A program made the translations under genes and the position numbers. Below are positions 11,975 to 39,668 of a stretch of 64,000 nucleotides of DNA, one piece after another. This DNA is from Macrostomum lignano (lineage: Eukaryota): contig NIVC01002244.1 of assembly GCA_002269645.1 (NCBI GenBank), positions 62,001 through 126,000 on the forward strand, in the 5' to 3' direction. A model generated the notes under the pieces. That model was not told the DNA's origin. It saw only the letters and a list, made by a program, of their open reading frames with translations, and made no database searches. Within the stretch, counting starts at the first letter, position 1. Each line of letters starts with the position of its first letter.

Positions 11975-14892
11975 TTAAGCGGAGGCTTCTTGCGGTGTGG
12001 CAACTGCTGCTTCGTCCGAAGCCGAGCGGCAGCGAGCGCAGCGCCTGCGGAGCCACACAGACAGCACGACAATTCCGGCGATGCCCAATATGATGCCAAC
12101 GAGGGCCGCGATACCTGCCGGAGACGGAGAGGCGGACTCCGAAGTGGACTCCTGAGCAGAGCTGTAGGGCGCCGATTCGGCATCAGAACTGCTGCTGCTG
12201 CTGCTGTTGTAGCTGCTGCTACTGTCGATTGAGCTGGTTTCGTCATCGCTCGAAGCTGAGCCGAAGAAGCCGAGGAAGCGCCACACGTGCTGTGTGATAT
12301 TAAAGGACCAACGCCAGCCGTGATGTTTCACGACAGTGACGGGATGCTCGACCAACTCATAGTCGGGCTCCTCGAATGGCGGGCGCCTCACTTGAATCTG
12401 GGCGAGCCCGGAGCGACCTTTCACGCACTGCATGATTGCGCAGCCGTCGACCGTGTCCAGAGTCACTTGGCTGAATTCTTTCGGGCAGTGCTTCGGCGCA
12501 TCCAGACCTCCGCTTGTCTCCGACAGCGGGTTGCCCGAGTCGCAGGAAAAAAACCCGGCGAACGGGATTCTGCCGCGAGAAGCCCTGCTCAGGTCCATAC
12601 TCAGGCACAGGTAGATGTCGCGTCCGACCTTGTAGGGCCGGAAGTGCTCCGGACACTCTTTGCTCTGCGTGATGTCGTTGAGGAATCGTCCGTCCGCAGC
12701 GTAGGCGCCTGCGTAGAACATGCCGGGGTTGGAGATCAGCTTCGAAGTGCGACGAGCAGTGCACCAGTAGGCAGTCAGGACGGTGTACGAGTCGACGCAT
12801 TGGGTTCGCTCTTCGTGGTGAACGCACCAGATAAACCAGGAAGTGCAATGCTTCGTCTTCCAGCAGCGCTTGCTGTTGCGGCCAACGGTCGAAAGAAGCT
12901 TCACCTGGAAAAGCAACACTTTACGGATCGTTAAGTAGCCTGAAACGGTCCGCTGGTAGGACAGAGTGTTATTGAGAAGCAGAAAGTTGTACCCTACACT
13001 TAAATCGAACTACTCGTAAGTACAAATGTAGCTAGATTTACTCGAGGGGCCGTAGCCCAGTGGTGCCCAGCGCGGCGCTCTGATGTGCCAGCGGCCTGGG
13101 CTCGATTCCAAGTGCAGTCGCATTAACTTAGGGCTAAATTGGAATCTCGGCTTGGGTCTGCTCGAGCAATAAACACCCTTGAGGGCCAACCTCCAAGGCA
13201 AAATGAAGTGTACAGGCCTAACAATAAATAAAGTTTGGGCCGCTGTACACTCCTGTGCTGTGCGTATGACTTCATATGTATGATGCGCTTGTGTGCTTGC
13301 TCAGGGGAGTCGGCGGAATGGGCAGTAATGCCGCCTCTCTTAAAGTGAGCCAGGGTGCACACAACCCTCTGCCTCTAACTGAAAAAGCTAAATTTACTCA
13401 CCGGCTCATACCCAACTGGACACCTGGTCCCGCCCGTGATGGGGTTGAGCAGAACGCCGCTGCCTGCACCGGAGCACAGGTTGAAGCCCGCGCGGGGTTC
13501 GACTCCCAGCACTGCTGATAGACGCCAGCGAAGCTGAAGTTGGTGCCAGGAGCCTCGCACTGGCCGGCTGTATTGGCGATGGGGTCAAAGTTTCTCGAAT
13601 TCGGGTCCAGACAGCCCTTGACGGTGTTGGCCTTGTAGTAGCTGAAATCAGTCATGGCAAACCTTCTTTTGAGCAGCATTCTTTTGAGCATGCTTGAAAA
13701 GCTTCTCATTCGTAGATGCTCGGTAATACTTACCGCATTACGGCATCCTCGATCTCCTTCCGCAGCTTCAACATGTGCGTCATGGGCAGGTTCGGAAGGG
13801 AGCGCCTGTTGACCACGCTGTACAGCGGCTCGCCATTGCGATCGATCGGCACCAGATTCTCGTGTAAAGACTTGATCCAGTCGTCCAGCTTCGGGTTCGA
13901 ACCAAGGACTGGTCCGCCCGAAGTTCGTAAAATCATTTTGCGAATGCTATTCTTGTACTTGGTGACTTCTTCATTCGTCACGGAAACACCGATGCTAATA
14001 TTGGAGCTGAAAAAACGAAGAAAGCTGAAGCTTGCTGCTGCTGAAAACTTGTTCTGCATGAAGTTCGAGTCGTCGATGGAACGAGAATTAAAGAAGTCCA
14101 GCTTTTCAAGAATGCCTCCAGCCTCTACAGAGGTGATCACGTGGGTTCCGAAGTCCCGGACGATTAGATCGGACAGGTATCGAGCCAGCTTTGTTTGATT
14201 GTTCACCAGCGCGTTCATCACTTCCGTCAAGCGATTGGTGAGCGCTGCAGACAGCTTGAAGTCTGGTTGAAGCTTCGAAGAGTAGAGTCGGTAACGAAGC
14301 TGAGACCTGCCAATATCCAGTTTGTTCTGCACCGCGACCTTCTTCACCTGTTGAAACTCGTTAGACAGTTTTCCGCCAATCCTAAATGCAGCGATTTTTC
14401 CACTGGCTTCTAGATTGATCGAGACGCTTAGCGAGCTGGTATAGTTGCTAAAGTGGTCAATCACTTCGGACATCACCTCTATGTTGGACTCCTTTCTCGG
14501 GTACAGAATCACATTCTTCGGCAGAACGTACATGCCGTCATCTGACAGGGCGCAGTCTGTAAACGACAGGTCGGCTACGAGACCCATGTCCTTGTTTCTC
14601 AGGTTGTCCCAGCCGCCACCTGTCAATCAAGAAGATGAGGTTTTCATTTTCCATCTTAGAAAAACAGCAAGGTAAAACGCTTGCCAACACAAAATATTTC
14701 AAGTGTCAAAAAATCTCGTTAATTACCTGGCATCGAAGAGAACCGAGTGATCGAGCTTCCGCTATTAAGCAGCCACACGCACCTGTTGCTGCCATCCGAG
14801 GCGGGCAAGCTCTGATTGAGGTTGCTAACTGGTGCAGCCCCAATGCAACAGCAAAGACCAGCGAGGATCGAAAGAACCAACGGCAGTTGCAT
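11975..14892 (-). pseudogene. MPEG1: MPEG1/perforin-2-like copy A (exons 14892-14727, 14619-13734, 13641-13402, 12904-11975); 1-nt deletion in exon 3 gives a 431-aa truncated product or a pseudogene
   Basis: Signal peptide; MPGGGWDNLRNKDMG; MACPF motif DFGTHVITSVEAGG; EGF-like [14 protein letters not shown]; P2 motifs GFFSCDSGNPL and CPKEFSQ; TM helix. Exon 3 is 240 nt versus 241 nt in intact copy C (frameshift at ~13489-13493). Confidence 0.88.
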
Positions 14893-36833: not shown

Positions 36834-39668
36834 ATGCTCCAAGGCATTGCCGCTGTGGCATTGGCGGCAGCCATTGTCTGCGCTGCTCAAGCAACACCAC
36901 CTTCGGTTACCGAGGTTAAAAATCATCAAGCCAATGAAAATAATCTACCAGCTTGCAAATGGCTCGTCGACAAGAAGAGCAACCTAAATCGCTTTTCTGC
37001 GCTTCCTGGTAAGTATCTTATTATTCAGAAGCTGACAAAAATAGGACTGAATTGCATGTGTATACGAGTGTATCTGCACTTCAAAATATCATCTCTCTCT
37101 CTCGCCTCTCCATCTTTGCATACCACTGAGATGTTTCGATGAATTTTACCGCTAAAAAATCCAGTAAAAATACAACCACATTTAATTAGGCGGCGGCTGG
37201 GACAACCTGAGAAACAAGGACATGGGGAAAGTGGCGGACATCTCCTTCAACGACTGCACCCTCTCTGATGACGGCGCGTACGTCCTACCAAACAGAGTGA
37301 ACCTACTCATCCGCAAAGAGTCCGCAGTGGAAGTCATGTCTGAGGTGATGGAGCACTTCAATAACTACACCAGCACCCTCAGCCAGTCAATCAACGCCGA
37401 AGCCTCCAACAAAGTTCTCAGCATCAACGGCAAGCTGTCCGATGAGTTCCAGCAGATGAAGTCTGTGGCCGTTAGCAGCAAGTTCAAGATGGGCCGGACG
37501 CAGCTTCGCTACAGGCTCTACACGGCCAAGCTGCAGCCGGACTTCCGGCTCTCCGAGGCGTTCGTCAGCCGCATGTCCGACATCGTGAGCGCCATCGCTA
37601 GTAACCGAACCAAGCTGGCTCGATACCTGTCCGATCTGGTGATCAGGGATTTCGGAACGCATGTGGTCACCACGGTTGACGCGGGCGGCGTTCTTGAAAA
37701 GGTCGACTTCTTTAACAAGGACGCCTTTAGCAGCCAGGAGTTCACAAACAGCAAGCTGTCGGCCACAATGAGTCTCAACTTTTTCAGCCTGCTAAACATG
37801 TCAGCCAAATTTGAATACATCGCTACGAAGCAGAACGTCGAGAAGTACGAAAAGAGCATCAGCAAGATGTCTATCAAGTCGCATGGCGGTCCAGTTCTTG
37901 GTGCAGACCCGAGTCTGGAAGACTGGCTGAAAGGACTCAAGGAAAACCTCGTAGGGGTGGATGTGGACGGAGAGCCGCTGTACGCTGTCATCAGTCGAAG
38001 GTCGCTACCTGAGATGCCGGCGGTGTTCCTGCTGCAGCTCAGAAAGGAGATTGAGGATGCAGTAACTAGGTGAGCCCAACTATTTTCAATCCGTCTATGG
38101 AAACCCTTAGAACCCTTTTGAAGCAATAGTTCAAAAGCGGTATTACGAGTGCGACCTATTCTATCCACTTGTAACCACAAAAAGGTACTACGCCGCCAAC
38201 GCAGTCAAAGGCTGTCAAGATCCGAATTCCGCCAATTTCGACCCTACCGCTAACTTGGACGGCCATTGCGAGGCACCAGCGACAAATTTCAGCTTTGCCG
38301 GCGTCTATCAGACGTGCACAGAGACCAGGTCTTGGTTGGGTGCTTGTAGCGCATACGGTGGTGCTTTAAGAAACCCAATAAGTGGGGCGTTTTCATGCCC
38401 CAAAGGCTACGAAGAGGTGAGCTGCTCCTTATGATACAGAGTATGAAAGCATGCATGTACATGCAATTAACTTAGCATGAAAGACTGCCGTAAAAGGCAT
38501 AAGATCGCAGCTCTGCTCATCATGAGAATCCTGCTTGCTCTTCAAAACCACCGAGCAGGTGCCTCTTCTTACAAAAACTGGTCAAACCAAGGAAAAGTGC
38601 ACCAAGAAAACCACAAACTGCTACATATTTTTCACCTGCGACGACGGCTACGATTGTGAGAAATCGACCACTACACTCCATGCGTTTTGGTGCGCCGCGA
38701 GAAAAGGTGCTCGGCTCCGAACCCACTCGGGAATGGTGTTCGGCGGGGCCTATGCCACTAACGGCCGCTTTTTGAACCAAGTCACTCAGGCTGCCTCCTG
38801 CCGAGAGCTCTTCAAGCCCTACGTTATTGGACGGGACATCGCGCTCTGCCTGAGCATGGACCTGCACTCGGCCGCTAGATATCGACTCCCGATCGGCGGA
38901 TTCTTCTCCTGTCGGTCGGGAAACCCGCTGGCCGAGCCAAGTCGGGGTCTGGTGGCTTCGTCGGGTGGTCTCTCTGCTGAGTCCGAGTGGCCAAAGCAAT
39001 GCCCCGAGGGCTTCAGCCAGGTCACCCTGGACACGGTGGACGGCTGTGCCGTCATGCAGTGCGTGAAGGGCCGCTCCGGTCTGCACCGGCTGCCAGTACG
39101 ACGTCCGCCGTTCGAGGAGCCCGACGACGAACTGATCGAGCGCCCGGTAACTCGCATTGAGAAGCACGGCTGGCGGTGGGGCTACGACATAAGCAGCAAC
39201 TCGTGGAGCTTCAAGGGATTCTCTGGAAGCGGCGTGCAGAAAGCAACTGGACTGCAGGCGTCAGAATTTCGTGTACCGTCCGAATCCACCGATACGCGGA
39301 TTTCAACACCGATCCTAGTGGTGTTCTGCTGTTGCCTAGCAGGAATCATGGCAGGTGTCGCAATTACTATGCTTGCGACTCGCTCGTCTGGAAGCGCTGC
39401 TACTCCAATTATGCAAAGACTTCGCCATAGATTCAAGCGAACTCGGCGGAGTTCGTTTGATCTGCCTGACGACGAGATCTGTCGTAGTCCTCTGAGTAGA
39501 AGTCCTGAGTTAAACCATCCGAGAAGAGTGGTGTACGGCACAGTGGAGTCGGCAGAGGAGCTTCTCGATTGCAGCGGCCAGAGCGACAAGGATAAGCTGG
39601 CCATGGACGACGAAGCCGAGGTCCTTGTCTCCACGGTGTGCCGAAAATCTCGTCGCGAACTGAGCTGA
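36834..39668 (+). CDS. MPEG1: MPEG1/perforin-2-like copy E, intact, 798 aa (exons 36834-37008, 37190-38069, 38185-38416, 38559-39668)
   Basis: Signal peptide MLQGIAAVALAAAIVCAAQA; RFSALPGGGWDNLRNKDMG; DFGTHVVTTVDAGG; P2; TM PILVVFCCCLAGIMAGVAITMLA. Exon phases are consistent. Confidence 0.93.

What the first reader, a model, noticed from the sequence alone, without database searches (positions are those of the whole stretch)
11975..39668. Five-gene perforin-2/MPEG1 cluster showing birth-and-death evolution in an invertebrate
Seen: five paralogs with the same 4-exon structure (phases 1, 2, 0). C (805 aa) and E (798 aa) are intact, A and B are frameshifted twins, and D has a broken exon 1. C, D and E are strongly diverged, whereas A/B are clearly closest to C. 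Established: MPEG1 is a membrane-tethered MACPF pore-former that kills phagocytosed bacteria; it is single-copy in mammals and present in few copies in many animals. Inference: this is a locally expanding antibacterial pore-forming arsenal with old and very recent duplications, and the best candidate for the notable system in this window.
Basis: partly seen in the sequence, partly recalled or inferred. Interest (0 to 1): 0.82.

Follow-up and report, generated by a model that had tools for sequence, protein, structure and literature searches.

The report
Flatworm MPEG1 (perforin-2) gene cluster
This is a real tandem cluster of five perforin-2/MPEG1 pore-former genes in the flatworm Macrostomum lignano, but the genes are already annotated, the family expansion is already published, and the apparent "dead" copies are most likely one-base errors in the genome assembly.

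Summary
The window is Macrostomum lignano assembly Mlig_3_7, contig NIVC01002244.1, positions 62001-126000. The sequence observation holds. There are five MPEG1 paralogs, each with four exons, GT-AG introns and intron phases 1, 2, 0. C (805 aa) and E (798 aa) are intact. A and B are near-identical inverted twins sharing a 1-nt frameshift in exon 3. D has a 1-nt frameshift in exon 1. All match mouse/human MPEG1 structures across both the MACPF and P2 domains (E = 5e-111).

The "birth-and-death" reading is weak:
- **Nature of the frameshifts.** Both are single-base deletions in short C runs of a PacBio/Canu assembly.
- **Other copies read through.** The older ML2 assembly and the homeologous contigs read through both sites with otherwise identical proteins.
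- **Other contigs have their own errors.** Those contigs carry different one-base deletions that the window lacks.
- **Selection.** Substitutions between homeologs are mostly synonymous.

A/B is not a very recent duplication. The same 4.2-kb palindrome exists on a homeologous contig, and its arms are more alike within a contig than between contigs, which indicates concerted evolution.

All five genes are in GenBank (PAA59642-47, except the Kelch gene). A 2023 paper already reports 13 MPEG1 genes in this species. The finding is ordinary and already known. The antibacterial role is inferred, not tested.

The parts
11975..14892 (-). MPEG1 paralog A (GenBank PAA59642/3 type, BOX15_Mlig003757). It has 4 exons and gives 740 aa if one C is restored in exon 3. 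As assembled it stops after 431 aa.
   Evidence: Gene model. Pfam MACPF at 5.4e-24.
13494..13497 (-). C4 run in exon 3 of A, the site of the frameshift. ML2 and both homeolog arms have C5 here. The mirror site in B is 18982-18985.
17587..20504 (+). MPEG1 paralog B, the inverted twin of A. It carries the same C4 frameshift. It differs from A by 5 substitutions, all in exon 4, of which 3 are nonsynonymous.
11302..15495 (.). Left arm of the palindrome. It contains gene A, its flanks and about 300-400 nt of the 3' end of a retroelement.
   Evidence: The same structure is on the homeolog (L008 3721-7906 and 9401-13586).
15496..16983 (-). Unique 1488-nt spacer of the palindrome. It holds the remnant of a degenerate non-LTR retrotransposon (endonuclease and RT fragments).
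   Evidence: ORFs. Pfam Exo_endo_phos_2 at 2.7e-8 and RVT_1 at 7e-4.
16984..21179 (.). Right arm of the palindrome, containing gene B.
23035..27702 (-). BTB/BACK-Kelch gene (703 aa) that lies between B and C. It is not part of the family but is conserved in every homeologous copy of the locus.
   Evidence: Gene call in L001. Pfam Kelch_1 at 3.5e-15.
29021..31753 (-). MPEG1 paralog C, intact, 805 aa (GenBank PAA59645, BOX15_Mlig025771g1).
   Evidence: PDB MPEG1 hit at E = 5e-111 over residues 52-623.
32688..35968 (-). MPEG1 paralog D. It gives 754 aa if one C is restored in exon 1. GenBank PAA59646 starts at an internal Met and gives 685 aa.
35868..35870 (-). Site of the 1-nt difference in D exon 1. 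The window has GCG where L002, L009 and L010 have GCCG.
36834..39668 (+). MPEG1 paralog E, intact, 798 aa. GenBank PAA59647 gives 786 aa because its model removes 36 nt that the homeologs genuinely lack. E lies head-to-head with D, with start codons 866 bp apart.

Best explanation
The region is a lineage-specific tandem array of five MPEG1 (perforin-2) genes in the neopolyploid flatworm Macrostomum lignano.

**What each gene encodes.** Each gene encodes a type I membrane protein made of a signal peptide, a MACPF pore-forming domain, a cysteine-rich P2 membrane-binding domain, a low-complexity stalk, one transmembrane helix and a variable cytoplasmic tail.

**Inferred mechanism.** By homology with vertebrate MPEG1, the proteins would be delivered to endo-/phagosomal membranes and assemble into ring-shaped prepores through MACPF-MACPF contacts. 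The basic and aromatic beta-hairpin of the P2 domain would bind the target membrane. On acidification, the two helical clusters of the MACPF domain would unfurl into a beta-barrel pore in engulfed microbes.

**History of the array.** It arose by successive duplications in the order D, then E, then the A-type/C split. A later inverted duplication of the A-type gene, next to a non-LTR retroelement, created a 4.2-kb-arm palindrome. That palindrome predates the divergence of the subgenomes and is kept homogeneous by arm-to-arm gene conversion.

**State of the copies.** All five copies are most likely intact in the animal. The two 'pseudogenising' frameshifts are most likely homopolymer consensus errors of the Mlig_3_7 assembly.

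**Shown versus inferred.** Shown here are family membership, gene structures, cluster organisation, conservation of the palindrome and cluster on homeologous contigs, and purifying selection. Inferred are pore formation, the antibacterial role, and the artefactual nature of the frameshifts.
For: **Identity of the window.** It is 100% identical to GCA_002269645.1 contig NIVC01002244.1.

**Family membership.**
- Pfam MACPF is found in all five copies.
- phmmer against PDB hits only MPEG1 entries (6sb3, 8a1d, 6u23, 6u2j) at E of about 1e-110 over residues 52-623. The P2-only crystal construct 6sb1 hits at 2e-39.
- The best database relatives are all annotated MPEG1.
- The MACPF signature [YF]GTHV-x6-GG and the GGGWDNLRN motif are present, and 14 Cys are invariant with mouse, starfish and clam.
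- An N-terminal hydrophobic leader is present in all five copies. A C-terminal TM segment passes the hydropathy cut-off in A, B, C and E.

**Selection.**
- Pairwise dN/dS is 0.16-0.35 between paralogs.
- Between homeologs the synonymous:nonsynonymous counts are A-type 5:1, C 28:8 and D 1:1.

**Lineage-specific expansion.** The Macrostomum sequences form one clade with 100% bootstrap support.

**Frameshifts are probably artefacts.**
- Every 1-nt indel between the window and the homeolog sits in a short homopolymer, and in each coding case the broken copy has the shorter run.
- ML2 proteins P0005 and P0124 (A-type) are intact where Mlig_3_7 is broken. ML2 P0130 (D) and the Mlig_3_7 homeolog protein P0009 read through D exon 1, though each is itself disrupted in exon 4.
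- The A-type exon-3 site is C5 on both homeolog arms.
- GCC is present in three other copies of D.
- The assembly method was Canu on early PacBio reads plus Pilon, in a genome with three roughly 98%-identical subgenomes.

**The palindrome is real and old.** The same arms and spacer occur on NIVC01000833.1. Arm-to-arm identity is 99.98% there and 99.64% in the window, against 98.3-98.6% between contigs.

**Splicing.** Spliced mRNA contigs of a C-type ortholog from three RNA-seq runs support the exon junctions.
Against: - No read-level data could be examined, so the frameshifts cannot be proven to be errors.
- The same frameshift is present in both arms of the window palindrome. One ML2 protein (P0125) also shows the C4-type reading. 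A real frameshift allele spread by gene conversion is therefore possible.
- ML2 and Mlig_3_7 share the same PacBio reads, so they are not independent samples.
- D has a weakly hydrophobic Gly/Ala-rich TM segment and lacks a juxtamembrane stretch of about 26 aa.
- No expression, localisation or activity data for these genes were found in the searchable literature.
- The immune role is extrapolated from other phyla.
Confidence: 0.78

Rival explanations
1. Genuine birth-and-death evolution. A, B and D would be young pseudogenes, or truncated products, in this subgenome copy. The A/B frameshift would have spread to both arms by gene conversion, as part of gene loss after whole-genome duplication.
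For: - The frameshifts are in the deposited sequence.
- GenBank annotates A and B as 431-aa truncated products and D from an internal Met.
- Both arms share the C4 state, and ML2 entry P0125 also shows it.
- Neopolyploids are expected to lose redundant homeologs.
Against: - Each frameshift is a 1-nt deletion in a C run, with no second lesion in more than 2.2 kb of coding sequence.
- Otherwise identical intact versions exist in ML2 and on homeolog contigs.
- The homeolog contigs carry different private C-run deletions that the window and ML2 lack. This is the pattern of consensus noise.
- A-type substitutions between homeologs are 5 synonymous to 1 nonsynonymous.
Confidence: 0.17
2. A/B is an assembly artefact, either a fold-back chimeric long read or a haplotype duplicate. 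Only one A-type gene would then exist at this locus.
For: The arms are 99.64% identical. Missed-adapter PacBio reads can create palindromes. Mlig_3_7 is known to contain expanded or collapsed haplovariants and chimeric scaffolds.
Against: - The arms are separated by a unique 1488-nt spacer and differ at 13 sites plus a 2-nt indel.
- The palindrome lies in the middle of a 280-kb contig.
- An independent contig (NIVC01000833.1) has the same head-to-head pair, with 4186-nt arms and a 1494-nt spacer.
Confidence: 0.04
3. The paralogs are real and intact, but some serve a non-immune role. For example, they could permeabilise ingested diatoms or bacteria during intracellular digestion in gut phagocytes, or have other tissue-specific roles. 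The different cytoplasmic tails would direct different trafficking.
For: - The cytoplasmic tails range from 24 aa in A and B to roughly 100 aa in C, D and E, and they are unalignable. The ectodomains are under purifying selection, while the stalk and tail evolve fastest, with dN/dS up to about 0.8.
- Flatworms digest intracellularly (general knowledge).
Against: There are no expression or localisation data. In every tested animal, MPEG1 has been linked to antimicrobial defence (general knowledge; PMC10781884). This rival overlaps with the main explanation, because killing engulfed microbes and digesting them are not separable by sequence.
Confidence: 0.2

Closest known systems
Vertebrate MPEG1 / perforin-2 (mouse and human; PDB 6sb3, 6sb5, 6u23, 6u2j, 8a1d)
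   Same: The architecture is the same: signal peptide, MACPF, P2 domain, TM and tail. Copy C aligns to it over residues 52-623 at E = 5e-111 and 35-37% identity. The MACPF signature and 14 cysteines are conserved, and the P2 hairpin region is basic and aromatic.
   Different: The flatworm genes have 4 exons, whereas mammalian MPEG1 is usually described as intronless (from memory). They are multi-copy rather than single-copy. They carry Ser-rich stalks and much longer or unrelated cytoplasmic tails. No functional data exist.
Invertebrate MPEG1 expansions (molluscs, Rotaria, M. lignano) described in PMC10781884
   Same: This is exactly the phenomenon that paper reports: intensive duplication of MPEG1 in invertebrates, with M. 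lignano cited as having 13 copies and flatworm sequences forming one clade (my tree).
   Different: As far as I could read, the paper gives counts and trees. It does not describe the physical cluster, the palindrome, the inflation of counts by homeologs, or the assembly frameshifts.
Ampliconic palindromes with arm-to-arm gene conversion (for example on primate sex chromosomes)
   Same: The inverted arms are more than 99.6% identical around a unique spacer. Arm-to-arm identity is higher than identity between diverged copies of the whole locus.
   Different: The arms are only 4.2 kb, the locus is presumably autosomal, and each arm holds a single gene. Conversion is inferred from identity patterns only.

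Membership tests
MPEG1 / perforin-2 | MACPF domain (Pfam PF01823) with the signature [YW/F]-G-T-H-x7-G-G | tested here: met
   PF01823 is found at E = 5e-19 to 5e-24 in exon 2 of all copies. The motif is FGTHVITSVEAGG in A, B and C, YGTHVVTSVEAGG in D and FGTHVVTTVDAGG in E.
MPEG1 / perforin-2 | Cysteine-rich P2 domain directly C-terminal to the MACPF domain | tested here: met
   Copy C aligns to full-length MPEG1 chains through residue 623, and to the P2-only crystal construct 6sb1 at E = 2e-39. Fourteen Cys columns are invariant across A-E, mouse, starfish and clam.
MPEG1 / perforin-2 | Type I membrane topology: N-terminal signal peptide, single C-terminal TM helix and cytosolic tail | tested here: met
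   A hydropathy scan finds an N-terminal hydrophobic segment in all five copies and a TM segment in A, B, C and E (KD above 2.6). In D the segment MALGVVGGVLGAVGVGGTAAYLV, followed by RRR, falls below the threshold. No dedicated signal-peptide predictor was available.
MPEG1 / perforin-2 | Groups phylogenetically with metazoan MPEG1 rather than with perforin-1, complement C6-C9 or other MACPF proteins | tested here: met
   The named proteins among the 120 best database hits listed are MPEG1 or MACPF proteins of the MPEG1 type. PDB hits are MPEG1 only. The NJ tree places the flatworm clade among invertebrate MPEG1. Non-MPEG1 MACPF outgroups were not included in the tree.
MPEG1 / perforin-2 | Forms oligomeric, acid-triggered pores and kills engulfed bacteria | not testable with these tools
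   This requires recombinant protein with liposome or EM assays, and knock-down with bacterial challenge.
Birth-and-death multigene family | Tandem duplicates of clearly different ages | tested here: met
   dS is about 0.7-1.1 for A-C and above 1.6 for D and E against the others. The tree is nested.
Birth-and-death multigene family | Bona fide pseudogenes among the copies | tested here: inconclusive
   The only lesions are two 1-nt C-run deletions, contradicted by ML2 and by homeolog contigs. Read-level data were not available.
Gene-converting palindrome | Arm-to-arm identity exceeds identity between diverged copies of the same palindrome | tested here: met
   Arm identity is 99.64% in the window and 99.98% on the homeolog, against 98.3-98.6% between contigs.

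The most novel reading that the evidence does not exclude
The C4 frameshift is real in this subgenome and was copied to both arms by intra-palindrome gene conversion. One homeologous A/B pair would then encode only a secreted 431-aa MACPF fragment with a truncated P2 domain, or nothing, while the pair on the other subgenome stays intact. That would be a snapshot of palindrome-accelerated homeolog loss or neofunctionalisation of an immune pore-former in a neopolyploid.
Probability: 0.15. Interest if true: 0.35.

Novelty: already known. Interest (0 to 1): 0.15.

Why it matters
Scientifically the finding adds little. MPEG1 expansion in invertebrates, and in M. lignano by name, is published, and all five genes are deposited and named.

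There are two practical lessons:
- **Copy counts are inflated.** The published figure of 13 mixes true paralogs with copies from the three subgenomes. I see about four paralog types in this cluster plus at least two or three elsewhere, each present on two to four contigs.
- **Pseudogene calls need read-level checks.** In the Mlig_3_7 assembly, single-base homopolymer deletions survive in duplicated regions, so pseudogene or 'birth-and-death' calls cannot be trusted from the assembly alone.

The conserved palindromic A/B pair is a neat small example of concerted evolution. Because M. lignano is transgenic- and RNAi-tractable, the cluster could be a convenient system for asking what MPEG1 paralogs do in an animal with intracellular digestion.

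Tried and rejected
- **First protein search.** A search with the MACPF exon of E alone found only one distant hit because of the word-index limit. The full-length C protein was needed.
- **Third protein search.** I spent it on a Kelch ORF, hoping to walk along homeolog contigs, and it returned nothing.
- **Spliced protein look-ups.** The homeolog loci were instead reached through cluster members.
- **RNA searches.** Rfam at gathering threshold and ARAGORN found nothing in the window.
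- **3' transduction or twin priming.** I considered whether the non-LTR element had made copy B this way. I rejected it because the outer arm ends have no poly(A) and the two arms end at mirror-image positions.
- **Fold-back misassembly.** Rejected; see the rival explanations.
- **Rescue of D exon 1.** I looked for an alternative in-frame ATG or a mini-intron. The conserved frame has no ATG, and the only GT..AG candidate is about 25 nt long.
- **Literature.** Searches for the transcript IDs or for any functional work on flatworm MPEG1 found nothing beyond PMC10781884.
- **Structure prediction.** I did not run it because the sequence match to solved MPEG1 structures is already decisive.

Full report
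**Source of the window.** The window is eukaryotic, with GC-rich exons, AT-rich spacers and many minisatellites. A protein search with copy C gave 97-100% matches to Macrostomum lignano proteins. The locus fetched with the D protein is 100% identical to window 22688-45406. The window is therefore GCA_002269645.1 (assembly Mlig_3_7, inbred line DV1), contig NIVC01002244.1, positions 62001-126000.

**Checking the observation.** All five copies contain a Pfam MACPF domain. tblastn with E finds the four-exon pattern five times. I read the splice junctions by eye and verified them by script. Every intron is GT-AG, and the intron phases are 1, 2, 0 in all five copies. C is 805 aa, identical to GenBank PAA59645. 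E is 798 aa. A and B sit in inverted arms (11302-15495 and 16984-21179) that are 99.64% identical, around a 1488-nt spacer. Both lack one C in exon 3, so the raw frame ends after 431 aa. D exon 1 has its signal peptide and its conserved ...RFSALPG end in different frames. Amino-acid identities are A-C 68% and 46-53% for the other pairs.

**What the genes are.**
- Copy C matches only MPEG1 entries in the PDB (6sb3, 8a1d, 6u23, 6u2j) at E of about 1e-110 over residues 52-623. That span covers both the MACPF and P2 domains. The isolated P2 crystal construct 6sb1 matches at 2e-39.
- The named proteins among the best database relatives are annotated MPEG1 or MACPF proteins from molluscs, echinoderms, nemerteans and vertebrates.
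- An alignment of A-E with mouse, starfish and clam MPEG1 shows the GGGWDNLRN motif, the MACPF signature and 14 invariant cysteines.
- The P2 hairpin region is basic and aromatic, with CWLVFTC in C, CTSWFIWC in A and B, CWLIFHC in D and CYIFFTC in E.
- All copies have an N-terminal hydrophobic leader and a single C-terminal TM segment followed by Arg/Lys. The TM segment is weak in D.
- Family membership is therefore secure. The mechanism is taken from established work on vertebrate MPEG1 and is inferred, not shown: prepore rings form on the membrane and convert to beta-barrel pores on acidification in phagosomes.

**Evolution of the family.** In an NJ tree, all Macrostomum MPEG1 sequences form one clade with 100% bootstrap. 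The cluster members form a subclade with 99% support and the topology (D,(E,((A,B),(P0004,C)))). P0004 comes from spliced mRNA contigs in three RNA-seq runs (SRR28338163-5). It is a C-type ortholog, probably from another species, and it supports the exon junctions. Pairwise dN/dS is 0.16-0.35 overall and 0.12-0.41 in the MACPF and P2 domains. It is highest in the stalk, TM and tail.

**Are the frameshifts real?** The assembly was made with Canu from early PacBio reads and polished with Pilon. The genome has three subgenomes that differ by about 1.4-2.4%. In such a genome short reads multi-map, so polishing is weak.

The locus is present on other contigs:
- NIVC01000833.1 is 98.8% identical to the window and carries E'-D'-C'-Kelch-B'-A'.
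- NIVC01001121.1 is 98.1% identical and carries Kelch-C-D-E-mito carrier-CNOT6.
- NIVC01002939.1 is 98.7% identical.
- NIVC01000118.1 is a more diverged copy (95-97%) carrying C and Kelch only.

Comparison with these copies points to consensus noise:
- Between the window and NIVC01000833.1 there are 25 indels for 70 mismatches in 9.3 kb. Nearly all are 1-nt length changes in short homopolymers.
- The coding indels are all deletions in the copy with the broken frame. The window is broken in D exon 1. The homeolog is broken in D exon 4, C exon 2 and A-type exon 4.
- At the A/B site the window has C4, but both homeolog arms have C5.
- ML2 protein A0A1I8FUV4 is 100% identical to A over 621 aa once one C is restored, including the residues that distinguish A from B and from the homeolog.
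- ML2 A0A1I8IZJ2 is the intact version of the homeolog gene that Mlig_3_7 breaks at codon 489.
- For D exon 1, three other assembled copies have GCC and only the window has GC. ML2 A0A1I8IZL0 reads through exon 1, although it is itself garbled for about 45 residues in exon 4.
- Between homeologs, substitutions are 5 synonymous to 1 nonsynonymous in the A-type gene and 28 to 8 in C. That is incompatible with neutral decay.

I conclude, at roughly 80% confidence, that the frameshifts are consensus errors and that all five genes are intact. Two caveats remain. ML2 and Mlig_3_7 share the same PacBio reads. One ML2 entry (P0125) also shows the C4 reading.

**The A/B pair.** It is not a misassembly and it is not very recent. 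NIVC01000833.1 carries the same head-to-head pair, with 4186-nt arms that are 99.98% identical and a 1494-nt spacer. Identity between contigs is only 98.3-98.6%. The palindrome therefore predates subgenome divergence, and its arms evolve in concert. The spacer and inner arm ends are a degenerate non-LTR retroelement. The outer ends have no poly(A), which argues against retroelement-mediated transduction.

**Novelty.** All five genes are in GenBank:
- PAA59642 and PAA59643 are A and B, deposited as 431-aa products.
- PAA59645 is C.
- PAA59646 is D.
- PAA59647 is E.

UniProt names the ML2 versions 'Macrophage-expressed gene 1 protein'. PMC10781884 (2023) reports MPEG1 in Platyhelminthes, a monophyletic flatworm clade, and 'Macrostomum lignano has 13 MPEG1'. 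I found no functional or expression study of these genes. The finding is therefore an already-known gene-family expansion. The only small additions are the physical map, the conserved palindrome, and the warning that the copy count and the pseudogene calls are affected by homeologs and assembly errors.

Noticed in passing
window 12419-12676 versus 19803-20060: All five coding differences between A and B fall within 258 bp of exon 4, and three are nonsynonymous (D/N, S/N, S/A). There are none in the other roughly 2.4 kb of the gene. The B-specific residues are not seen in the homeolog pair or in ML2 proteins. This could be patchy gene conversion or consensus noise.
   Followed up: partly
window about 39453-39485 (E exon 4): GenBank's model of E (786 aa) removes 36 nt with non-canonical ends. 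The homeolog contigs (L009, L010) genuinely lack this stretch, which is 33 nt by the BLAST coordinates and corresponds to the 36 nt (12 codons) missing from the annotated protein. The annotation of the window copy was probably shaped by a homeolog transcript, and 798 aa is the likelier product here.
   Followed up: yes
L003 (NIVC01000118.1:122932-145370): A fourth, more diverged copy of the locus (95-97% identity) contains only the C-type gene and the Kelch gene. It has unrelated sequence upstream and a RING/B-box gene downstream where A/B would be expected.
   Followed up: partly
window 5503-6618 (+): A fibrinogen-related-domain gene (Pfam Fibrinogen_C at 4.5e-33) lies about 5 kb beyond the palindrome. 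It may be another innate-immunity lectin next to the MPEG1 array.
   Followed up: partly
window 9213-10315, 27958-28339, 40144-41052, 43149-43604, 44456-44890, 45685-46290, 47741-48184, 49004-49357, 57420-57848, 58357-59948: There are unusually many minisatellite arrays with units of about 20-25 nt. Several appear to lie in introns or spacers of the mitochondrial-carrier and CNOT6-like genes. Array lengths differ between homeolog contigs.
   Followed up: no
window 12905-13401 (A intron 3), mirror 19078-19574 (B), and 34020-34555 (D intron 2): These introns are 497 and 536 nt, against 90-145 nt in the paralogs. They contain repeat-like inserts that look SINE- or MITE-like by eye. ARAGORN finds no tRNA-like structure in them.
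   Followed up: no
window 15100-16984 and 21805-22278: Degenerate non-LTR retrotransposon fragments (endonuclease, RT and C-terminal region) occupy the palindrome spacer and the sequence just outside the right arm. Repeats may have mediated the inverted duplication.
   Followed up: partly
window 32688-33100 (D exon 4, 3' part): D lacks the juxtamembrane segment of about 26 aa (HPVT...GWRW...W.F.GF) that A, B, C and E share. Its TM segment is Gly/Ala-rich and falls below the hydropathy cut-off.
   Followed up: no
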